The translations under genes were made by a program, and so were the position numbers. The notes beneath the pieces are model-generated. The model was not told where the DNA came from. It worked only from the letters and a program-made list of their open reading frames with translations, and did no database searches. Positions 492-24,406 of a stretch of 64,000 nt of DNA are shown here, piece after piece. Each line of letters starts with the position of its first letter. The first letter of the stretch is position 1. The stretch spans positions 186,001-250,000 of the IMG/VR virus record IMGVR_UViG_3300023174_002543, one strand, 5' to 3'.

Positions 492-815
492 CTAAACGCT
501 AAATGAACTTCCGCATCCACATGTACTTACCGTATTGGGATTGCTTATCTTAAATTCCGACCCCATTAAGTCCTCTGTATAATCAATTTCCGCGCCTTGC
601 ACATATTGAGCCGACATTGAGTCAACCAGGACACTTGTGGAACCTATCTCAAATTCAAAGTCATCTTCGTTTTTCATTTCATCTAGTGTAAAGCCATAAC
701 TAAATCCAGCACATCCTCCACCTTGCACAAACATACGTAGTTTGAGATCAGGATTGTTTTCCTCTGCTAAAATATCTGCTATCTTAACTTGTGCTGATTG
801 TGTTATTGTTATCAT
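492..815 (-). CDS. erpA: A-type Fe-S carrier (ErpA/IscA/HesB family)
   Basis: GGGCAGFSY and C-terminal TCGCGSSF motifs. Confidence 0.93.
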
Positions 816-1357
816 ATATATCCTCTTACTTTATCAAAGAAACTTGGTTTATTTACTTCTGGACCTTTTACGTCACCATGACGTTTATGTTGGCTAGCAT
901 AATCATAGTACTTACCAACAACATCAAATCCTGGTTTAAAGAATATAGCTGCGGGTGGTCTGCTCATACGTAACATACCTACACGTTCTTTACCTTCTGG
1001 TGCAGTAACAATACCCTTTGTATTGTAGTCAACTTTTTGCAACCATGCATTGGGTTTTAACTTCACAAGCCAGACGTATGGATGCTCCCCGGCAAACAAA
1101 CTATCTGCATTAATATATTCTTTTAAGGGATAGAACCAAAGAGCCGGACGTCCCTTCCCTGCACCGATATAGTCTACACTAAAGTCAGGATCTTCTAGGT
1201 CGGGACTACGACCAAACTTTTGTTTTGCACTGAATGCTAATTGGTCCAATCTAGTGAAACGCACAAAGTATTCACCAGAACCATGTTTACGTACATCACG
1301 CATAATTTGATCCTTGATGCTGACCTTGGCTTCAGTAATAAATTCAGTAGCTCTCAT
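812..1357 (-). CDS. Putative capsid-packaged protein with [10 protein letters not shown] leader; function unknown
   Basis: Leader shared with the next two genes; single domain of about 170 aa. Confidence 0.6.
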
Positions 1358-1361
1358 TATT

Positions 1362-2948
1362 TTATTTCTTTATAGGTTTCCAATGGAATATAATCATACC
1401 CATATTAGGATATTCTTCATGTTGCCATTTTGGTCCTAATATATTCTGAATTACTGGGACGAAATATTTACGATACAAACTAGCACGGTTATCGCCTTTG
1501 GCAGTAAATGATATAGCCGGCGGCCGAGCCTTAGCCATGTATTCAGGCAACTGCTTTTTAACAATATTGAGAACTGTGCTTAATATCTTAATCGTTGATT
1601 TACTAGCCGAAGTAGGCATCTCGGGTGCATCATAATCTCCATTCACTGTAAACGTAATATGTAATGTGTCATTAAATTCACTACGGTCAAAGAATACATC
1701 TACCCAATGATTATCTACTGTAGAATGAAATAGGCTGCGCTTTCTTTTGTTATTGGGTTTATATTCACTAGGACTATCACCTAATTCAGTAAGTTGTTTT
1801 TGTGGTTTGATACGTGTTAATGTATAGATCGCGGCACTGGGATAATCTTTTCTTGTCAAATCGTAACCGGTACCAGTGATATATCTTTGAAGCATTCTAT
1901 CATACAGTCTAGCTCTACTGCCTGTAGGGTCATCATCTTTTTCTGCACTGAAATTCAACATCACCGGTTTACGCTTGGCAATGAATTGTTGCATGGCAGT
2001 CAACACAGTGGCAAACACACGCGGAGCATCGCCTTCTCCGGTGATCTCCATGTTTTCATCACGCTCAAACTCCACCATCCAGCTGTTGTCGCCCTGGGCC
2101 ATGAACAGTACAACTAATTCACTGCCGTCATCTAAGTCGGATGTAGCATGCCAGTCACCATTTGTTTTTTCCCAATGAACATTATAAGGTTGGTTAAAGG
2201 CTTCTAGTATACCTTGTTCTTTAAGTTGCGGTATCGGAACATATGCTAGTATATCTTTTTTATTCATTAACTCGGCAGCGGCCCATGCTCTATGTGTACC
2301 ATCTAATATATAACCTCTTGTATCTATAACAATAGGTCTCTTGTCTATATGATGCATACTATATTCACCTGCATGTCTAAAGTCTACAAATCTGCCACGA
2401 CCGTATGGATCATATGTATCAGGTTCTTGTTCTGCATCATCATACTCTTGGTCAGGTATATGTAGACTAGATAAAGGAACACGCTTCAATTGATATTGCG
2501 GATGACGCATTATTAATCTCTTTAAGAATCCACCACCTTGTTGGTCTTTAGGATGTATATCACCTACATAATTCCATACTTCTATATTGGATACAACATT
2601 AGAATTTGTTTCTTCCCAAACACGAACTTCTTCTCCACGGTGTTTATTCCAGAAACCTGCACCTGCATCAGTTTGGTCATAACTTCTAACAATCTTATAG
2701 CCAAGTTTTTTGATATAATCATACATCACTTTAGCAATACCTTGACCTTGATATTTTTCATTAACCCACAGGTCTTGTGGATCTAGCTCTTTGTCATCAC
2801 CCATATAGAATGTAACATGACCTAATACGTTATTACCCCAGTCATCAAGGGCATCAACCATTAACTCATAGTCATTCTTGGTTACTTTTAGTGTTATGCC
2901 TTCGTAGTCTACTAGTTTGGCTTCTGTTATAAATTCACTTGCTCTCAT
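1362..2948 (-). CDS. Multi-domain putative internal head protein: GNAT-like, ParB/Srx-like and two copies of a repeated ~130-aa domain
   Basis: MRASEFITEA leader. GNAT motif A (VNEKYQGQGIA...QTDAGAGFW). ParB motif (PIVID...ILDGTHRAWAA). Linkers VWEE, QGILEA and QLTE. Confidence 0.7.
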   Translation of the reverse strand: MRASEFITEAKLVDYEGITLKVTKNDYELMVDALDDWGNNVLGHVTFYMGDDKELDPQDLWVNEKYQGQGIAKVMYDYIKKLGYKIVRSYDQTDAGAGFWNKHRGEEVRVWEETNSNVVSNIEVWNYVGDIHPKDQQGGGFLKRLIMRHPQYQLKRVPLSSLHIPDQEYDDAEQEPDTYDPYGRGRFVDFRHAGEYSMHHIDKRPIVIDTRGYILDGTHRAWAAAELMNKKDILAYVPIPQLKEQGILEAFNQPYNVHWEKTNGDWHATSDLDDGSELVVLFMAQGDNSWMVEFERDENMEITGEGDAPRVFATVLTAMQQFIAKRKPVMLNFSAEKDDDPTGSRARLYDRMLQRYITGTGYDLTRKDYPSAAIYTLTRIKPQKQLTELGDSPSEYKPNNKRKRSLFHSTVDNHWVDVFFDRSEFNDTLHITFTVNGDYDAPEMPTSASKSTIKILSTVLNIVKKQLPEYMAKARPPAISFTAKGDNRASLYRKYFVPVIQNILGPKWQHEEYPNMGMIIFHWKPIKK

Positions 2949-4894
2949 AGTACTGCCAAATATTCTTTAAATTTATTGTGTCTATCTTGTAGTCCACTTA
3001 GACCGGGATTGATTGCATTGGTTACTTCTTTTGTGTTGCTAAAATTACTAACATTGGGTCTAACTTGATTCTTCCAGAACCATAGTGCAATTTGAGCACC
3101 TACATCTAGATTACTAGCCAGGTCGGGGTTTTTTACCAATCTATCATCTCCGAATATTTGCTTGCTTGCTCGGGTATAATTGTCACGTCCAGTCAACTGA
3201 ATAAAGCCACGACCTTTAAATAGTTCTCCGTCGCCTTTTACTTTGTTACCTAATTGTCTTGCCTTGCGCGGAGCTTCATATTTGGCAAATCTTTTTTTAT
3301 TGCCCACTTCCTTCATCTTACCAAAGTCCCAACTCTCATGCCGAGTCTGAGCCATGAATTGTGCCAGTTCTACTCCATTGAGTCCTGCGGCTTTAGCAGC
3401 AGTTTGTAGTGCAGCTTCAGCATCACTATTGTCACTTAATAATGTTACACCTTTTTCTTCTTCTTTGTCATCACGTGAAAACTTTGGAATCATTGATGTA
3501 AGTTTATCTTTAAATGAAGTTGTTGGTTGTGCAACTGGTTGTGCAACTTTAGTAGGCTCTTGCTTAAGAGTAGGCTTTACAGTAGCGGGCATTTTACTAA
3601 TAGGTTTAGAATAATCAGGTACTATAACTTTTTGTCCTATTTCTAACTTAGTATTACGACCCATCTTGTTGAGTTTGTATATCTCTAATGGATTTACATT
3701 GTTTTGTCTTGCTATACTGTAAACGGTATCTCCGGGTTCAACTATTTGTTGAACCATTTGAGGAGCCTTTGCATTAGCACCCATTGCCATCGCACCTGCC
3801 ATAGCACCTGTTGCTAGTGCAGATTTCCAATCTTCTTCTAACTCATTTTCTGTTACACCTTGCTTACTTTCATTCATACCCTCTGCACCATAATGAGCAA
3901 TTTTACCTGCTTTGTGCATGTTTTTTACTTGTTTGAATACTTTATCTAAATCATCAGTAACACGGACTATCCACCCTTGACTAGCGATATATTTAAATGG
4001 ATCACCGATGGGCATTTGTTTAATAGGCTTACTAGGATTTTCACTAAACCATTCACCTGTTGGTAATTGTCTGAAATCGCCAGCATCAAACACAGTTAAG
4101 TAAGTTTTACGACTACGCATTGCTGGCAAATCTTTTTGGTCAAAATAAACAATAGGTTGACCGTTTTGCGTAAACTCTACATAGCGTGTTTCATGTGCAT
4201 TGCCTGTAGCGTACAGTGCTGTTCTACGCGGATCACCGGCAAACAATCCTTTAGTAGTGTTAGTTTTAAGATTTTTGTTTTTCCAATAACTATCGTCACC
4301 TGTATCTAAACCACTCTGACTCCAATCATCCGTATGCTTGTATGCTTTGAGGCCAGACACAAAATCTGTGACAGGTTTAGAATCAATTCGTGTTACTGTT
4401 GCACCTTCCGCCACACCTTGTTTTAATCTACTCAATTCATATATAACTAAATCACCATTATCTGCACGAAAAGCCCTATAACCCCAGGCTTTGGCATAAC
4501 GAATCACCAGTCTGTCATACAACTTGGCACGACTCTCAGGATTTGGTTGAGGCTGGTCAGGCTCATAATATATTGTTGGATCAGTTGCTTTAATAGCTGA
4601 AAAACTCAATCTTGAAGGTTTGTATTTTTTGATGTATTTTTGTATAGCGTTTAACACCGTGGCAAAGATACGCTGTGCATCACCTTCGCCTGTGACTTCT
4701 TGGCTGTTGTTTCTATAAAATTCAACCTGCACTACTTCTTTGCCTTCGTCATCTTGTTGATTGTTGAACATGATGCTTAAATTTGTTCCGTCGGGCAATT
4801 TTGTGTTTAAATCAACGTCACCGTAATCGCTTTTTTCCCATTTGCCTTTATAGGGTTGGTCAAAGGCCTCTGTTATAAATTCACTTGCTCTCAT
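2945..4894 (-). CDS. Multi-domain virion-associated protein: repeated domain, unknown domain, LysM and GH19 lysozyme/chitinase
   Basis: Start moved to MRASEFITEA (ATGA overlap with the sod stop). LysM: VEPGDTVYSIARQNNV. GH19: AQTRHES, GRGFIQLTGRDNY, INPG. Linkers QGVAEG and QGVTEN. Confidence 0.8.
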   Translation of the reverse strand: MRASEFITEAFDQPYKGKWEKSDYGDVDLNTKLPDGTNLSIMFNNQQDDEGKEVVQVEFYRNNSQEVTGEGDAQRIFATVLNAIQKYIKKYKPSRLSFSAIKATDPTIYYEPDQPQPNPESRAKLYDRLVIRYAKAWGYRAFRADNGDLVIYELSRLKQGVAEGATVTRIDSKPVTDFVSGLKAYKHTDDWSQSGLDTGDDSYWKNKNLKTNTTKGLFAGDPRRTALYATGNAHETRYVEFTQNGQPIVYFDQKDLPAMRSRKTYLTVFDAGDFRQLPTGEWFSENPSKPIKQMPIGDPFKYIASQGWIVRVTDDLDKVFKQVKNMHKAGKIAHYGAEGMNESKQGVTENELEEDWKSALATGAMAGAMAMGANAKAPQMVQQIVEPGDTVYSIARQNNVNPLEIYKLNKMGRNTKLEIGQKVIVPDYSKPISKMPATVKPTLKQEPTKVAQPVAQPTTSFKDKLTSMIPKFSRDDKEEEKGVTLLSDNSDAEAALQTAAKAAGLNGVELAQFMAQTRHESWDFGKMKEVGNKKRFAKYEAPRKARQLGNKVKGDGELFKGRGFIQLTGRDNYTRASKQIFGDDRLVKNPDLASNLDVGAQIALWFWKNQVRPNVSNFSNTKEVTNAINPGLSGLQDRHNKFKEYLAVL

Positions 4895-5445
4895 AGACTC
4901 TTGCCCCAACGTGTATTGATGACATTCCAGTTTATGATCTTCCATTGTTCACGCAAATACTTCTTTTTATCGGCTCCGTAGTCAAGTGTCCAGGCATGTT
5001 CCCACCAATCAATTAATAACAATATATCATTACGAACTTCATGGTTTTTGATTGTTTTGAGTTTGCCATCACTTGCTAGATAAATCCAACCACTACCCTG
5101 TATAGTCATAGCCTCAGTCTCAATACTATCTTTGAGACCGTCGTAACTTCCATAATGCTTGTTTATAAATCCAAGCATAGGGCCGTTGGGCTTGTTATTG
5201 TTGCGTACCTCACGGAACTGAGGGAACAGAGTATTGTGTAGGAAAGCACCTGCGTAGTTAAATTCTTTATCACCTTCACCCTTGTTATATCTATCAGCAT
5301 ATCCATGTGCTAGTTTACCAAAGTGCAAGTCTAAGGCACCGGCACTGAATACAGGCTTTACATCCTTATATTCAAAATTTAACGGAATGATTTCTATATC
5401 TTGAGGCTTGTTTTTATCCTCAAGAAGGCTGATTATATCTCGCAT
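4891..5445 (-). CDS. sod: Fe/Mn superoxide dismutase
   Basis: LHFGK..HGY, FLHN, QGSGW and DWWEHAW motifs; the H/H/D/H metal ligands are present. Confidence 0.9.
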   Translation of the reverse strand: MRDIISLLEDKNKPQDIEIIPLNFEYKDVKPVFSAGALDLHFGKLAHGYADRYNKGEGDKEFNYAGAFLHNTLFPQFREVRNNNKPNGPMLGFINKHYGSYDGLKDSIETEAMTIQGSGWIYLASDGKLKTIKNHEVRNDILLLIDWWEHAWTLDYGADKKKYLREQWKIINWNVINTRWGKSL

Positions 5446-5471
5446 ACTTATATTTATCGTATGCGAGATAT
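5435..5471 (-). promoter_or_regulatory. 13-bp inverted repeat covering the sod start codon, with a late-promoter-like motif in the loop
   Basis: Minus strand reads ATATCTCGCATAC-GATAAATATAA-GTATGCGAGATAT. Confidence 0.75.
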
Positions 5472-5476
5472 GTTTA

Positions 5477-7816
5477 TCAGAAGCGTACTGCTAATTGAAT
5501 TTGTGCTATATCAGCAACGACTCCATTTTGTCTTTGTTGACCTATTTTTAGTATCATAGTAGAGTTGTTTTGTGCGTTATACATCAATGTTCCGTAAGCA
5601 GTAGATAGATTTTTATTGTTTTGTGCTACTTCCCCGGATACTGCCCAATTTTGATTAAATTGGTGTTCATAGCGCATTCCATACTCTGTAGTATCAACTG
5701 TTTGCTTTAGGTTAGTATAGTCAACTGCTGTTAGTGAAGAACCAGTTTCCATAACATAGTCACGTGAATTATGTTCTTTTCTAGCACCAACGAAAGGTCT
5801 GAATCCCTTCATAGCAGGGGTATATACACGCAAATGCGCCCAGGTATCCTGACCATGTGTATTAGCATTGTTACTCATACTTAATTCAGGTAATGTATGG
5901 AATGTATTATAAGTATTTTTGGATTGTCCTACATCAGTTTTAAATATCCAATCATTATGTACATATAGGTTATAGATAGTAAGTGCTTCTTTGTATAAAC
6001 TACCGCCACTGTTAGTGCCATCTAATACAGTGCTTATTCGGTTGTATTGTAAACCTAACAATGAAGAACGACTAATTCTATGCTCTGCACCAAATGTATC
6101 TATTGTTGCAGTATAACTATACCCATCTGATAAGTTAGACTTTGTTTTTGAACCATGTATATAAATGTTAATATCACGGTCATCAAAACTACGGTTAGAG
6201 ATTCTATCGTCTTTAACTAAGTTTCTACTTAATGGATCACTTAATAAACTATAGTTGATTCTAGTATTGGTTTCAGATAGTTTATCCATTTGGTCAATGC
6301 GTGTAGTATAGTTTTGATCCGTTGAGGTAATCTGAACATCATCTACAATAGTTGTAGTTGTTGTCACATCATTTCTTGTAGTAACTACGGTTACAGGAGT
6401 ATCTGTTGTAGTAGTTGTTGTACCATCACTCCAAGTAGTAACTGAAGTAGGAGTTGTAACGGTAGTTATAGTTACCGGTGTTGTATTAGTAACCACAGTA
6501 GTTACAGGTGTTGTACTAGTTAGTGTGGTAGTACGAATGATATTGAGTTCTCTTACACCACGCTCACCTCTAGTATTAGCATATGTAGTAACATCAACGG
6601 TTGAACCCCTTGTTATATTACTTGTTGTTACTGTTGTACCTGGTGTTTCTGTTACTACAACCGATGATGTGCCCGGTGTAGTACTGACTACTGTAGGTGC
6701 AGGTGTAGACATACTGCTTACAGAGCCTGCGGTTCCTGGATTAGCAATAGAACCAACTAATGTACTTGTGCTGGTTGATGTGTTATTACTATCATAGTAA
6801 TAGGTAACTTCACCTATCTGTACGCTATCACATGCTAATGTACCTAATGCTGATTGACAACCTGATATTGAACCATACGTATCAATAGCCTTAATGCTAG
6901 GGAATGTTATAAAGTAATAAACATATGGATTATTATTATTAATAGTAATCATACTTGTTTGAGTATAACGACCGCTGACATTTTCTAATGTTGTACTTTG
7001 ATTTGCAGTAATCTCAGTCCAAGTACGACCATCATTACTACCATACAAGGTAAACTTAGTAGGATCTCTTGGTACAAAGTCGTTAGCAGTAGTAAATTTA
7101 ATACCATTGATGACTTTACCTGCATTCAATGTAATTGTAAATCCTGCATTAGCACGGTCAAAGTTTAAATATTTCGTACCACTACTTCCGTCAACTGCCT
7201 TAGTTGCACCTTCACCACTTGGACTATTACTACTTGTAGGAGTAACAGTACTGATAATGCTACTTGTAACTGCTGTATAGTTTACAGTAGGTGCAACAGT
7301 TTGTCCTGCGGCTAATGGAGTAGTTGAACCACCTACACTCAATGCATTAACTTGTGATAATGTTGGATTGCGTGTTCCAGTCCATGACAACCCACTAGTG
7401 TTAGCAAAACCTTGTGTCATACTAAACAACTGACCGGTGTTGTTATCATTGCCCACAAAGAAGAAATAGTCTGTGCCCATATTAATAATATGCCCAGTGC
7501 CCATTACTGCTTTTTGAACGCCTGCTGAATTATATTGAATAGCATTGTATGGATTTGTGCTGTTACCTGTAGCTACAAATTTAATATAGTCTCCGGAAGA
7601 CCAACTTAGTTGACCACTTGTCCATGGAATCTTATATGCTGTTCCAGGATTTTTACTATAGATTTGACAAGTGGTCGTATTCATACAAGCATTAACATTC
7701 CACTGACTATCTGCTATCTGTGCTTGACCAAATTGTAAATCTGTAAAATCTGCACTTGCATTTACGCTCATGGCGGTAAGCAGAGCCATAATGGCTCCCT
7801 TTAAAAATCTTATCAT
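5477..7816 (-). CDS. Autotransporter-like outer-membrane protein: signal peptide, F5/8 type C (discoidin)-like domain, Thr-rich stalk, C-terminal beta-barrel
   Basis: Signal peptide ending ASA. Discoidin pattern AVDGSSGTK...RDPTKFTLYGSNDGRTW. Alternating beta-strand C-terminus ending in Phe (QLAVRF). Confidence 0.7.
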   Translation of the reverse strand: MIRFLKGAIMALLTAMSVNASADFTDLQFGQAQIADSQWNVNACMNTTTCQIYSKNPGTAYKIPWTSGQLSWSSGDYIKFVATGNSTNPYNAIQYNSAGVQKAVMGTGHIINMGTDYFFFVGNDNNTGQLFSMTQGFANTSGLSWTGTRNPTLSQVNALSVGGSTTPLAAGQTVAPTVNYTAVTSSIISTVTPTSSNSPSGEGATKAVDGSSGTKYLNFDRANAGFTITLNAGKVINGIKFTTANDFVPRDPTKFTLYGSNDGRTWTEITANQSTTLENVSGRYTQTSMITINNNNPYVYYFITFPSIKAIDTYGSISGCQSALGTLACDSVQIGEVTYYYDSNNTSTSTSTLVGSIANPGTAGSVSSMSTPAPTVVSTTPGTSSVVVTETPGTTVTTSNITRGSTVDVTTYANTRGERGVRELNIIRTTTLTSTTPVTTVVTNTTPVTITTVTTPTSVTTWSDGTTTTTTDTPVTVVTTRNDVTTTTTIVDDVQITSTDQNYTTRIDQMDKLSETNTRINYSLLSDPLSRNLVKDDRISNRSFDDRDINIYIHGSKTKSNLSDGYSYTATIDTFGAEHRISRSSLLGLQYNRISTVLDGTNSGGSLYKEALTIYNLYVHNDWIFKTDVGQSKNTYNTFHTLPELSMSNNANTHGQDTWAHLRVYTPAMKGFRPFVGARKEHNSRDYVMETGSSLTAVDYTNLKQTVDTTEYGMRYEHQFNQNWAVSGEVAQNNKNLSTAYGTLMYNAQNNSTMILKIGQQRQNGVVADIAQIQLAVRF

Positions 7817-7904: not shown

Positions 7905-8798
7905 TTAGCAGTTGTACACGCCTGGATCCATAACTATAGTACCATTACCGTCTGAATTATACCAACTACCTCCGCCAGCACCAGCACCACTGTATGGGCT
8001 ATCCGAACTACGTGATAATCCTATGAAGGTTAACTGGTGTCCTACTGCACTGTTATCTTCTGCTAATGTAGGATTTCCATACCCAAGTGATTGAATCAAT
8101 GCGATACAATTTGAAACAGCAGGTAATGGTGCAGTTGGAACTGTAATTGTACTTGATGTTGGATTATATACATACGAATTTGAAACTATGCGAATATCTG
8201 TTTGATAACCTACAAAAGGTAAACCATCTTGCGGATTTGGCCAACCATTACCAATAGTCAATGAATTAGATTCATACACTATATTGTCTGTTTGCGTACC
8301 ACCGCAACGAACTCCGTTAACCCAAACGGCCTCTACATTACTATTGGCAGCATTTCTACTTACTGCAATATGATACCAAACATTTTTTACAAAATTTGTA
8401 CTAGGTACATATATATTTTGACCAACAAAATATCCATCTACTCTTATGTTTGAATTATTAACTGTTTGACTACCGTCCCAATAATTATCATTAACATATA
8501 TTCCTAGATAGTGCGGTTGTCTTGTGGTATCGCTTGGACTACCTATAAAAGTACCTACGCATCTACTAGCACTATTATCCCATTTAACCCATCCCTCTAC
8601 TGTAAATGAACGGGTAGTAGTTGGTCTTGCTTTACCAGTTATGAGATTATAAGGTCCGGTATAATCTGTGTTATTTACGATAGCGTCATTTGGAGTAGAA
8701 CCGGATCCACCTCCACCTCCGCCTGTGCCGGCTCCGAATGTGATCCCTTTGCCTATTGTTAGGCCTGCGTGTAATGTTAATGTTAATGGTGCAACCAT
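7905..8798 (-). CDS. LamG/concanavalin-A-like lectin domain protein, probably virion-associated
   Basis: FTVEGWVKW, WYHIAVSR and FVGYQTDIRI motifs; Gly linker. Confidence 0.75.
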   Translation of the reverse strand: MVAPLTLTLHAGLTIGKGITFGAGTGGGGGGSGSTPNDAIVNNTDYTGPYNLITGKARPTTTRSFTVEGWVKWDNSASRCVGTFIGSPSDTTRQPHYLGIYVNDNYWDGSQTVNNSNIRVDGYFVGQNIYVPSTNFVKNVWYHIAVSRNAANSNVEAVWVNGVRCGGTQTDNIVYESNSLTIGNGWPNPQDGLPFVGYQTDIRIVSNSYVYNPTSSTITVPTAPLPAVSNCIALIQSLGYGNPTLAEDNSAVGHQLTFIGLSRSSDSPYSGAGAGGGSWYNSDGNGTIVMDPGVYNC

Positions 8799-8834
8799 GA
8801 TAATCCTTTTTAATTATCACGTATTTATCTCTTT

Positions 8835-10681: not shown

Positions 10682-10785
10682 ATTAATAGTATACTATATT
10701 GTATTTAGTATGTCAATATTTATTTGACCAAAATCAAATAAATACTAATAAGAAGTATTATAACTAAAGTATAAGGAGTCAATCT

Positions 10786-20423: not shown

Positions 20424-20492
20424 ACATATATTTATGAAAAATATACTACTTTAGTGCAAACCAACTAAATAATAGTACAAGGAGAATTTATC

Positions 20493-24345: not shown

Positions 24346-24406
24346 TCTCCTTTAAAAAGCAAGATGTTTATATAGACCTGACTATCAGCGTCCATATGTA
24401 TTTATA
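24346..24406 (-). promoter_or_regulatory. dnaK leader: TATAAATA late promoter plus a ROSE-like SD hairpin
   Basis: TATAAATA at 24399-24406; hairpin at 24375-24392; UCUUGCUU...AAGGAGA. Confidence 0.6.

What the first reader, a model, noticed from the sequence alone, without database searches (positions are those of the whole stretch)
812..4894. Putative capsid-targeted polyproteins: shared leader and protease-site-like linkers join swappable effector domains
SEEN: three consecutive genes begin [10 protein letters not shown] or MRASEFITEA, and two share an identical 26-bp start sequence. Domain boundaries fall at short recurring Glu motifs: VWEE, QGILEA (~2199-2216), QLTE (~1785-1796), QGVAEG (4403-4420) and QGVTENELEE (~3833-3862). 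The same domain follows ITEA-FDQPY at one gene's start and ILEA-FNQPY inside another, so the internal linker mimics the leader end. KNOWN: T4 internal proteins carry the capsid-targeting sequence MKTYQEFIAE, and the gp21 prohead protease cleaves after (I/L)-x-E. INFERENCE: these are polyproteins loaded into the prohead through one leader and cut into separate injected effectors (GNAT, ParB-like, repeated domain, LysM-GH19). The linkers would act as cassette junctions for domain shuffling.
Basis: partly seen in the sequence, partly recalled or inferred. Interest (0 to 1): 0.85.

Follow-up and report, generated by a model that had tools for sequence, protein, structure and literature searches.

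The report
Capsid-loaded phage polyproteins with swappable cassettes
Three neighbouring genes of an uncultured 367-kb T4-related giant phage carry a T4-like capsid-targeting leader on chains of unrelated enzyme domains, and the short linkers between the domains look like prohead-protease cut sites and are demonstrably the DNA points where whole domains are swapped between phages.

Summary
The window lies in a 367-kb T4-related jumbo phage. That phage encodes a gp21-type (S77) prohead protease, a scaffold rich in [VILM]xE motifs, and a gp23-type capsid protein.

The leader MRA(S/T)EFITE|A matches the T4 IPII/IPIII leader MKTYQEFIAE|A. It heads at least 7 genes in this genome and at least 146 very different ORFs in IMG/VR.

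In g2 and g3 every homology breakpoint falls on a [VIL]xE motif. The AlphaFold model of g2 is disordered only at the leader and the three linkers (apart from one 3-residue loop). Across five domain families, nearly every copy is preceded by [VILM]xE, whether it follows a leader or another domain.

Two results are new:
- The commonest linker, QGVAE, is conserved as DNA (CAAGGTGTGGCGGAA) and uses rare codons.
- A 566-bp cassette of g3 is 99.3-99.6% identical to two differently built genes from other metagenomes. Identity starts at one linker and ends inside the next.

Cassette exchange at linkers is therefore shown directly. Capsid targeting is strongly inferred. Internal cleavage is well supported but has no biochemical test. 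I rate this a new variant of the T4 internal-protein and polyvalent-protein systems.

The parts
5451..5457 (-). T4-late-promoter-like ATAAATA (GATAAATA), 5 nt upstream of the SOD-like start. It heads the coupled operon SOD-g3-g2-g1-IscA.
   Evidence: The same (G/A)ATAAATA-N5-8-ATG layout precedes many leader genes in IMG/VR loci.
4891..5445 (-). Fe/Mn superoxide-dismutase-like gene, first gene of the operon. Its N-terminal extension MRDIISLLE|D is leader-like, so it may also be cargo.
   Evidence: Pfam Sod_Fe_C E 7.5e-22. Sequence. Similar M-x3-x-hydrophobic-hydrophobic-E N-termini. Not tested further.
4868..4894 (-). g3 leader MRASEFITE (predicted capsid-targeting propeptide, cut after Glu9).
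   Evidence: T4 IPII/IPIII MKTYQEFIAE|A. Leader census.
4406..4867 (-). g3 domain D (DUF6934 family, function unknown), residues 10-163, ending in the linker.
   Evidence: At least 1000 clusters at 50% identity carry this domain at any position in the protein.
4406..4420 (-). Linker QGVAE, encoded CAAGGTGTGGCGGAA. Predicted protease site (V-A-E|G) and demonstrated recombination junction.
   Evidence: Homology ends peak at residue 163. DNA conservation. Left breakpoint of the 99.6%-identical cassette is exactly at 4420.
3848..4405 (-). g3 DUF6886 domain cassette, residues 164-349. Possibly an ADP-ribosyltransferase-like fold, but this is only a lead.
   Evidence: Pfam DUF6886. 90-99% amino-acid identity in dozens of other architectures. 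ESM lead with score 0.85-0.88.
3848..3862 (-). Linker QGVTE (V-T-E|N). The right breakpoint of the exchanged cassette lies inside it, at 3855.
3764..3820 (-). Ala/Gly-rich hydrophobic segment (ALATGAMAGAMAMGANAKA) at the start of the muralytic module. It looks like a membrane or SAR-type segment.
   Evidence: Hydropathy maximum of the protein. Conserved in homologues of the module.
3617..3742 (-). LysM peptidoglycan-binding domain.
   Evidence: Pfam E 1.1e-9.
2948..3412 (-). GH19 muramidase/chitinase-like domain. The long Pro/Thr/Lys-rich LysM-GH19 linker has no [VILM]xE motif, so LysM and GH19 should stay joined.
   Evidence: Pfam and PHROG endolysin families. Motif list. A separate leaderless 206-aa GH19 ORF elsewhere in the genome is the likelier endolysin.
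2922..2948 (-). g2 leader MRASEFITE.
   Evidence: AlphaFold pLDDT below 50 at residues 1-6.
2613..2921 (-). g2 GNAT acetyltransferase domain, residues 10-112, ending in VWE (2613-2621).
   Evidence: Pfam Acetyltransf_1. Homology ends peak at residue 112. pLDDT below 50 at residues 106-115. The same ...VRVWE| end is joined to different next domains.
2202..2612 (-). g2 ParB/Srx-like domain (ILDGTHRAWAA motif), residues 113-249, ending in QGILE (ILE = 2202-2210).
   Evidence: Folded in AlphaFold. hhalign to a Pfam-validated ParB_N segment gives only 52% probability. No Pfam or PDB sequence hit.
1785..2201 (-). g2 domain D (DUF6934), residues 250-388, ending in QLTE (LTE = 1785-1793).
   Evidence: Pfam E 2.2e-7. 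pLDDT below 50 at residues 242-249 and 382-388. Homology breakpoints.
1365..1784 (-). g2 domain D2, a diverged paralogue of D, residues 389-528. Always preceded by Q[LI][NT]E|LG in relatives.
1331..1357 (-). g1 leader MRATEFITE.
   Evidence: Glu9 is invariant in 51 homologues while residues 2-8 vary. pLDDT below 50 at residues 1-9.
815..1330 (-). g1 mature part (172 aa, pI 9.6). A stable single-domain family with a weak ADP-ribosyltransferase-like signal.
   Evidence: 339 clusters. AlphaFold pTM 0.71. Top Foldseek hits are all PARP/ART, but E is 0.09-5. ESM lead.
492..815 (-). IscA/ErpA-like Fe-S assembly gene, last gene of the coupled operon. It has no leader, so it is context and not cargo.
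   Evidence: Pfam Fe-S_biosyn E 7.8e-18.

Best explanation
g1, g2 and g3 are cargo proteins of a T4-type capsid-loading system in an uncultured jumbo phage.

Proposed mechanism:
1. The 9-residue leader MRAxEFIxE is the local version of the T4 capsid-targeting sequence. It binds the scaffold core, so the whole chain is built into the prohead (inferred by homology).
2. The S77 prohead protease then cuts after Glu in [V/I/L/M]-x-E. This removes the leader and, in g2 and g3, separates the domains at the linkers (inferred).
3. The predicted mature pieces are:
   - from g2: GNAT (12 kDa), ParB-like (16 kDa), D (16 kDa) and D2 (16 kDa);
   - from g3: D (18 kDa), DUF6886 (21 kDa) and hydrophobic-segment-LysM-GH19 (33 kDa);
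   - from g1: one 20-kDa basic protein.
4. These pieces stay in the head and leave with the DNA. The GH19 module would help cross the wall. The enzymes would act early on host targets or defences (inferred; specific functions unknown).

Because the domains are cut apart, they need not be compatible with each other, so any in-frame cassette can be added. The linkers are also the DNA crossover points. The commonest linker is a conserved 15-nt element, and near-identical cassettes bounded by it sit in different architectures. This last point is shown, not inferred.
For: Machinery:
- S77 protease, 99.5 bits, and gp23-type capsid protein, 330 bits.
- The scaffold-like ORF has 29 [VILM]xE motifs against 12.4 +/- 2.9 in composition-preserving shuffles. 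This is the highest motif density in the genome.
- The protease itself has 10 motifs against 4.1 expected.
- The capsid protein has 4 motifs in its first 43 residues and only 1 in the other 355 (all; sequence; T4 gp23 alignment).

Leader:
- T4 IPII/IPIII start MKTYQEFIAE|A. Here it is MRA(S/T)EFITE|A.
- At least 7 leader genes occur in this genome.
- All 146 pattern matches in IMG/VR are at ORF starts, ahead of diverse proteins.
- Five of five large contigs with leader genes encode S77, with 3-7 leader genes each and none for the reversed pattern.
- Synonymous codons vary freely, so selection acts on the peptide.

Linkers:
- 170 of 179 distinct contexts upstream of domain D are [VILM]xE|, and 177 of 179 have Glu at P1, against a 1.5% background.
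- The same holds for DUF6886 (44 of 45 contexts), D2, GNAT and ParB-like, whether after a leader or after another domain.
- Homology breakpoints of g2 and g3 coincide with VWE112, ILE249, LTE388 and VAE163.
- In the AlphaFold model of g2, pLDDT is below 50 only at residues 1-6, 106-115, 242-249, 382-388 and one 3-residue loop (445-447). VNE62, MVE291 and LPE467 lie within or at the edge of strands or helices; LKE242 lies in the disordered second linker.
- The LysM-GH19 linker, which must stay intact, has no motif.

Shuffling:
- Window 4420-3855 is 99.6% and 99.3% identical in DNA to two other architectures. Their flanks are unrelated and the crossover is inside the linkers.
- 11 of 20 internal breakpoints of DNA at least 93% identical lie within 15 nt of a GVAE-type motif, against 1.8% at random.
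- GVAE is encoded GGTGTGGCGGAA in 18 of 34 cases although GTG and GCG are rare codons.
- 149 of 167 exact 15-mer matches in IMG/VR are in frame inside long ORFs.
Against: - There is no virion proteome, N-terminal data or cultured member. PA5oct, Vibrio phage 2.275.O, nt-1 and 6E35.1a lack this leader.
- [VILM]xE could in principle be the first residues of each domain rather than a cut site.
- Val dominates P3 in the linkers, whereas the classical T4 rule is Leu/Ile.
- Some contexts before the LysM-GH19 module lack the motif.
- [VILM]xE is not depleted inside the cargo domains overall.
- The DNA-level conservation of QGVAE shows that at least part of the linker's conservation is not caused by the protease.
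- Effector functions are guesses. D has no known function, and the ART-like signals for g1 and DUF6886 are weak.
Confidence: 0.7

Rival explanations
1. The proteins are capsid-targeted and lose only the leader. The internal linkers are flexible spacers and recombination junctions, and the multidomain proteins are injected intact, like classical polyvalent proteins or T4 Alt.
For: The QGVAE linker is conserved as DNA with rare codons. Crossovers lie in it. Recombination alone could therefore explain that linker's conservation. In SPN3US all identified protease cuts make N-terminal propeptides only (PMC10052503).
Against: Linkers that are not QGVAE (NVNE, EITE, RVWE, QLNE, QLTE, QGILE) share no DNA motif but keep hydrophobic-x-Glu at P3-P1 in about 95% of contexts. 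The motif is the same as the leader's end, so leader-borne and linker-borne copies of a domain would have identical mature N-termini. The one linker that must not be cut (LysM-GH19) lacks the motif.
Confidence: 0.2
2. The rare-codon, SD-like linker sequence (AAGGUGUGGCGG) is kept mainly as a translational pause at domain boundaries to aid co-translational folding. The Glu motif and the shuffling are by-products.
For: GTG and GCG are 9.7% and 6.1% of Val and Ala codons in this genome, yet they dominate in the linker. AGGUG can pair with the anti-SD (my own knowledge).
Against: This does not explain the leader, the P3/P1 rule in linkers with other codons, or the exact coincidence of crossover points with the element. 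A pause at the linker comes while the last 30-40 residues of the domain are still in the ribosome tunnel (my own knowledge).
Confidence: 0.07
3. The shared N-terminus is not a capsid-targeting signal. It would instead be a translation-initiation or regulatory element, or a tag for another destination such as secretion or degradation.
For: g2 and g3 share 26 identical nt at the start. Many leader genes sit 5-8 nt after a late-promoter-like motif, so the first codons could matter for initiation on very short 5' ends.
Against: Across 145 distinct leaders the codons vary freely at synonymous sites while the peptide is fixed. The peptide matches the experimentally defined T4 CTS at the targeting Phe and the processing Ile-x-Glu (PMC9026906). 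It is acidic, not a Sec or Tat signal. It co-occurs with S77 protease in 5 of 5 large contigs.
Confidence: 0.03

Closest known systems
T4 internal proteins IPI/IPII/IPIII and Alt with the capsid-targeting sequence (Mullaney & Black 1996; reviews PMC9026906, PMC3012670)
   Same: A short shared N-terminal propeptide on otherwise unrelated proteins. It ends in Ile-x-Glu|Ala and shares the E-F-I-x-E core. The phage has a gp21-family protease, a gp22-like scaffold and a gp23-type capsid. T-even internal proteins are also a diverse set that shares only the CTS.
   Different: T4 internal proteins are single small proteins. Here one leader carries 3-6 unrelated domains separated by further cut-site-like linkers. 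The leader is 9 rather than 10 residues and starts MRA rather than MKTYQ. The phage is a 367-kb uncultured jumbo phage of the RaK2/PA5oct-like capsid lineage.
Polyvalent proteins of phages and conjugative elements (Iyer et al. 2017, PMC5512222)
   Same: Many unrelated conflict-type domains (GNAT, ParB-like, lysozyme-type, ART, deaminase, NUDIX, zincin) in one injected polypeptide, with extreme architectural mosaicism.
   Different: In that model processing is by an MPTase domain within the protein itself. g2 and g3 have no peptidase domain, and their linkers instead match the prohead protease motif. A conserved N-terminal targeting leader and a DNA-conserved linker were not mentioned in the passages of that paper I searched.
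Inner-body and ejection proteins of phiKZ-like phages (SPN3US gp245 substrates; PMC5694885, PMC10052503)
   Same: A gp21-related protease cuts after Glu in a short motif. Many head-internal proteins are ejected into the host.
   Different: Those propeptides are 100 residues or longer and all identified cuts yield N-terminal propeptides. No multi-effector polyproteins or shared 9-residue leader are described there.
Recombination at conserved motifs in T4-type phages: gp37/gp38 adhesin motifs (PMC3157838, citing Tetart 1998) and PeSL cassettes (PMC2839356, PMC4122927)
   Same: Short conserved sequences flanking variable modules act as preferred crossover points for modular shuffling.
   Different: Here the element is a 12-15-nt in-frame coding linker between whole enzyme domains of capsid cargo, and it also encodes a protease-site motif.
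T7 gp16 and other virion-internal muralytic proteins (my own knowledge)
   Same: A peptidoglycan hydrolase carried inside the capsid and ejected at infection to help cross the wall.
   Different: This is LysM-GH19 with an N-terminal hydrophobic segment, delivered as the last module of a CTS polyprotein. Its location in the virion has not been shown.

Membership tests
T4-type CTS-bearing internal head proteins | A short (about 10 aa) N-terminal propeptide shared by proteins that are otherwise unrelated | tested here: met
   g1, g2, g3 and at least 4 more ORFs in the genome. 146 of 146 IMG/VR matches are at ORF starts with diverse downstream sequence.
T4-type CTS-bearing internal head proteins | The propeptide ends in the gp21 cleavage motif (L/I)-x-E and keeps the targeting aromatic residue | tested here: met
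   F6-I7-T8-E9|A here against T4 F7-I8-A9-E10|A. Roles of T4 residues 4, 7, 8 and 10 are from PMC9026906. Glu9 is invariant in the g1 family.
T4-type CTS-bearing internal head proteins | The phage encodes a gp21-family prohead protease, a scaffold core and a gp23-type capsid | tested here: met
   Motif enrichment in the scaffold and in the capsid propeptide. 5 of 5 related large contigs encode the protease.
T4-type CTS-bearing internal head proteins | The protein is present in heads and processed after the leader Glu | not testable with these tools
   No proteomics are available. Cultured relatives lack this leader.
Polyvalent proteins (Iyer et al. 2017) | Two or more unrelated effector-type domains in one phage polypeptide, with mosaic architectures | tested here: met
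Polyvalent proteins (Iyer et al. 2017) | Processing by an in-built zincin-like MPTase domain | tested here: not met
   No peptidase domain was found in g2 or g3. HExxH modules do exist in other leader polyproteins: G000 254503-256002 and L248.
GH19 phage muramidase (endolysin-type) | GH19 catalytic domain with a cell-wall-binding domain | tested here: met
   LysM E 1.1e-9, GH19 E 2.3e-8, PHROG endolysin E 8e-31. The catalytic Glu residues were only inspected by eye (HES...KE).
GNAT acetyltransferase | GNAT fold or profile match | tested here: met
   Pfam Acetyltransf_1, 25 bits against a cut-off of 20.7. Foldseek hits to GNAT structures.
ParB/Srx-like nuclease domain | Profile match to ParB_N, including the DGxHR box | tested here: inconclusive
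   No Pfam hit at E<0.1. No PDB sequence hit. hhalign gives 52% probability over 24 columns centred on ILDGxHRxWA.
ADP-ribosyltransferase (g1, DUF6886) | ART fold and catalytic triad | tested here: inconclusive
   ESM scores 0.85-0.91. Foldseek top hits are PARP/ART, but E is 0.09-5 and TM about 0.2-0.3. No triad was identified.

The most novel reading that the evidence does not exclude
A large clade of uncultured T4-related phages runs a plug-and-play cargo system. A 12-15-nt in-frame element (GGTGTGGCGGAA, encoding GVAE) and its relatives serve two roles. They are the homologous-recombination site at which effector domains are exchanged between genomes, and they are the prohead-protease site that later frees each domain inside the capsid. 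One leader can then load any combination of injected enzymes, and new combinations arise without any need for the domains to fit each other.
Probability: 0.5. Interest if true: 0.9.

Novelty: new variant of a known kind. Interest (0 to 1): 0.8.

Why it matters
- It would extend the T4 capsid-targeting principle from single small internal proteins to modular polyproteins. It would also tie protease specificity to genome plasticity in a way not described before.
- It gives a sequence rule (leader plus [VILM]xE linkers) that flags probable injected proteins in metagenomic phage genomes. At least 1000 clusters carry domain D alone. Among the modules are GNAT, deaminase, NUDIX, ParB-like, zincin and ART-like domains, which are candidates for host take-over or anti-defence roles.
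- It makes the open question of what jumbo phages inject directly testable.
- The leader and linker could serve as a natural design for loading several proteins into phage heads in fixed ratios.

Tried and rejected
- Megablast of the locus against GenBank phages found nothing. By tblastn, only KVP40-like Vibrio phages have domain D, at 30-32% identity.
- Cultured capsid relatives (PA5oct, Vibrio 2.275.O) and the KVP40-like phages nt-1 and 6E35.1a lack the 9-residue leader. No published virion proteome could therefore be used.
- A fragment alignment for whole g3 (A3) was misaligned and was not used. The first g2 alignment (A1) was discarded for the same reason.
- Foldseek of the whole g2 model gave EEP/TDP2-type hits with rmsd above 20 A and TM about 0.2. 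I treat these as an artefact of the tandem D-D2 arrangement. The fold of D stays unassigned. My reading of a GNAT-like core (beta4-GxGxA-alpha) is an impression from the secondary structure only.
- Profile searches of D and of the ParB-like domain against PDB sequences found nothing meaningful.
- A general test of distance from HSP start to motif was noisy, with only 2-2.5-fold enrichment, because alignments run into the conserved linkers. It was replaced by per-domain context tables.
- I considered that [VILM]xE might be domain-intrinsic. I rejected this as the sole explanation because five unrelated domains and the leader share it.
- The library held no paper describing this leader or linker system. 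The only paper that mentions DUF6934 does so once, in a Flavobacterium genome report.

Full report
**What is in the sequence**

The three genes lie on the minus strand:
- g1, 812-1357, 181 aa
- g2, 1362-2948, 528 aa
- g3, 2945-4894, 649 aa counted from the Met of MRASEFITEA

They form a tightly coupled operon with an upstream Fe/Mn-SOD-like gene (4891-5445) and a downstream IscA-like gene (492-815). ATGA start/stop overlaps occur at 4891-4894, 2945-2948 and 812-815. A T4-late-promoter-like GATAAATA sits 5 nt before the SOD start.

g2 and g3 share their first 26 nt exactly. g1 encodes almost the same peptide with different synonymous codons.

Pfam finds the following:
- GNAT and DUF6934 in g2
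- DUF6934 (weak), DUF6886, LysM and GH19 in g3
- nothing in g1

g2 residues 247-452 align with g3 residues 7-264 (E 2e-32).

**What genome this is**

The window is G000:186001-250000 of a 367,104-bp IMG/VR virus record with 36.5% G+C. The record encodes:
- a gp21-family S77 prohead protease (99.5 bits)
- a gp23-type major capsid protein (330 bits) that is 66-72% identical to those of Sinorhizobium phage Phosso, Vibrio phage 2.275.O, Pseudomonas phage PA5oct and 121Q-like coliphages

**Evidence that this phage's protease uses the T4 rule**

I counted [VILM]xE motifs and compared them with composition-preserving shuffles:
- The scaffold-like ORF between protease and capsid genes has 29 motifs against 12.4 +/- 2.9 expected. 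None of 5000 shuffles reached 29. This is the highest motif density of any ORF of at least 150 aa in the genome.
- The protease has 10 motifs against 4.1 expected.
- The capsid protein has four motifs in its first 43 residues and one in the remaining 355, against 4.2 expected for that part.

The capsid N-terminus aligns with mature T4 gp23* just downstream of those motifs.

**The leader**

I read T4 IPIII and IPII from the T4 record. Both begin MKTYQEFIAE|A. The local leader MRA(S/T)EFITE|A keeps E-F-I-x-E|A. In T4, residues 4 and 7 matter for targeting and residues 8 and 10 for processing (PMC9026906).

Distribution of the leader:
- This genome carries it, or close variants, on at least four more ORFs. 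Three have MRA-N/T-EF starts and one starts MRAHELEE. A further ORF starting MKINEIINE may be another variant.
All 146 matches are at ORF starts, in front of very different proteins.
- Synonymous codons vary freely (Ala: GCA 63, GCC 39, GCT 35, GCG 8). Selection therefore acts on the peptide.
- Five of five large contigs that carry leader genes also encode an S77 protease. Each has 3-7 leader genes, and the reversed control pattern gave none.
- In the g1 family (339 clusters, nearly all stand-alone proteins of about 180 aa) Glu9 is invariant while residues 2-8 vary.

**The linkers as protein features**

Domain D was searched against 1.8 billion representative proteins using g3 residues 1-165 (leader plus domain D). 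It gave at least 1000 clusters (the cap), 215 of them at E below 1e-30. The domain sits at any position in proteins of 183-1759 aa.

The sequence just upstream of each domain copy follows one rule:
- For D, 170 of 179 distinct upstream contexts are [VILM]xE|, and 177 of 179 have Glu at P1. The background rate is 1.5%.
- This holds whether the domain follows a leader (…EFITE|AFDQPY) or another domain (QGVAE|AF, NVNE|AF, EITE|AF, RVWE|AF).
- The same rule holds for DUF6886 (44 of 45 contexts), D2 (Q[LI][NT]E|LG…), GNAT and the ParB-like domain.

In g2 and g3 the peaks of homology starts and ends lie at VWE110-112, ILE247-249, LTE386-388 and VAE161-163.

The AlphaFold model of g2 has mean pLDDT 82. 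pLDDT is below 50 only at residues 1-6, 106-115, 242-249, 382-388 and one 3-residue loop. Those stretches are the leader and exactly the three linkers. The non-junction motifs VNE62, MVE291 and LPE467 lie within or at the edge of strands or helices; LKE242 lies in the disordered second linker. In g1, residues 1-9 are disordered.

The long LysM-GH19 linker, which should stay intact, has no motif.

Leader-borne and linker-borne copies of a domain would have identical mature N-termini. This is what one expects if both junction types are cut.

**The linkers as DNA features (new)**

This analysis used only loci fetched through the leader pattern, so it is unbiased with respect to linker codons.
- In-frame GVAE is encoded GGTGTGGCGGAA in 18 of 34 cases. 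QGVAE is encoded CAAGGTGTGGCGGAA in 11 of 18 cases.
- GTG and GCG make up only 9.7% and 6.1% of Val and Ala codons in this genome. The probability of the 15-mer given the peptide is 0.0022.
- All four GTGTGGCGG 9-mers in the 367-kb genome are in-frame GVAE linkers of leader proteins.
Of these, 149 are in frame inside open frames of at least 150 aa, and their flanks are almost all different.
- Many of those ORFs start with looser leader-like 8-9-mers of the form M-x3-[DEQ]-hydrophobic-hydrophobic-E.

**Direct evidence of cassette exchange**

The DUF6886 cassette of g3 (window 4420-3855) is 99.6% identical over 566 bp to a gene on one JGI metagenome contig. It is 99.3% identical over 570 bp to a gene on another. 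Both genes have different architectures on either side.

- Identity begins at the first base of CAAGGTGTGGCGGAA in one comparison and 4 nt upstream of it in the other. The upstream sequences are unrelated.
- Identity ends within the next linker, after CAAGGTGT. The window then continues …AACAGAA (VTE) while the other two continue …GGCGGAA (VAE). After that all three diverge.

Across all loci held, 11 of 20 true internal breakpoints of DNA at least 93% identical lie within 15 nt of a GVAE-type motif, against 1.8% for random positions in the same loci.

Precedents for recombination at short conserved motifs in T4-type phages are the gp37/gp38 adhesins and the PeSL cassettes (PMC3157838; PMC2839356 and PMC4122927).

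**What the modules are**

- The GNAT, LysM and GH19 assignments are solid.
- The genome has a separate leaderless 206-aa GH19 ORF that is the likelier endolysin. The g3 module starts with an Ala/Gly-rich hydrophobic segment. It is therefore better read as a virion-borne wall-breaching module.
- D and D2 belong to DUF6934 and have no known function.
- The ParB-like label is only weakly supported.
- g1 and DUF6886 give consistent but weak ADP-ribosyltransferase-like signals.
- Relatives combine the same cassettes with deaminase, NUDIX, M48/zincin, amidoligase and further GNAT and ParB domains.
- Predicted mature pieces are 12-33 kDa.

**Comparison with what is known**

- T-even internal proteins are diverse proteins that share only a CTS (PMC3012670).
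- Polyvalent proteins are mosaic injected multidomain proteins thought to be processed by their own MPTase domain (PMC5512222).
- In SPN3US all identified protease cuts yield N-terminal propeptides (PMC10052503).
- I found no description of a CTS-led polyprotein with protease-motif linkers that are also DNA-conserved recombination junctions.

**Verdict**

- Shown: the observation; the breadth of the leader and linker families; the coincidence of linkers with domain boundaries; cassette exchange at the linkers.
- Strongly inferred: capsid targeting through a T4-type CTS.
- Inferred with good but indirect support: cleavage at the internal linkers by the S77 protease.
- Speculative: the functions of the released pieces after injection.

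Noticed in passing
window 5451-5457 (minus strand); also 8822-8828, 10717-10723, 20429-20435, 24399-24405: ATAAATA is under-represented in the window (21 copies against 35 expected). Several minus-strand copies (listed under 'where') lie 5-60 nt upstream of ORF starts. For the SOD-like gene, and for many IMG/VR leader genes, the motif ends only 5-8 nt before the ATG. This suggests T4-type late promoters with very short or leaderless 5' ends.
   Followed up: partly
window 4891-5445 (minus strand): The SOD-like protein has an N-terminal extension of about 20 residues, MRDIISLLE|DKNKPQ..., ahead of the SOD fold. Its first nine residues end in L-L-E, like the looser leaders seen. It may be another capsid cargo. 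The metal-ligand motifs look intact by eye.
   Followed up: no
G000:C1:254503-256002 (minus strand, outside the window), next to leader gene 253554-254486: A 499-aa ORF starts MRAHELEE and has six GVAE/GVME/VTE/VNE linkers. Three of them use the exact GGTGTGGCGGAA. It also has a CxxCxGxG zinc-finger-like module and a C-terminal HELTHH zincin motif. It is a further, more fragmented polyprotein.
   Followed up: partly
G000:C1:304291-305130 (minus strand, outside the window): This leader protein (MRATEFIAE|L) has a D-like domain, then KQVNE|S, then a YunG-like C-terminal domain (both Pfam hits are weak). It is another two-module cargo.
   Followed up: partly
L003 2024-2944 (Vibrio phage nt-1 ORF252) and L004 2495-3355 (Vibrio phage 6E35.1a): Cultured KVP40-like T4 relatives carry domain D. 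It is internal after ...VNLTE|AFDKP in nt-1 and N-terminal after MIIFE|AFSRP in 6E35.1a. nt-1 ORF253 starts MIEFLTE|A. These isolates could be used to test cleavage at such junctions.
   Followed up: partly
G000:C1:285123-285743 (minus strand, outside the window): A leaderless 206-aa GH19-like ORF (weak Pfam hit, E 1e-3, with HES...KE motifs) is probably the true endolysin.
   Followed up: partly
window 5477-7816 and 7905-8798 (minus strand): The 779-aa protein has an N-terminal signal-like segment, an F5/8 type C (discoidin) domain, a long Thr/Ser/Val-rich region and a C-terminal part that looks beta-rich. A 297-aa LamG/concanavalin-like protein follows it. They may be surface or fibre-associated proteins and are unrelated to the finding.
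   Followed up: no
window 4406-4420; IMG/VR loci L132-L246: The linker core AAGGTGTGGCGG is G-rich in a genome with 36% G+C and contains an SD-like AGGTG. Whether it has a further role (translational pause, nuclease or recombinase target) is unexplained.
   Followed up: partly
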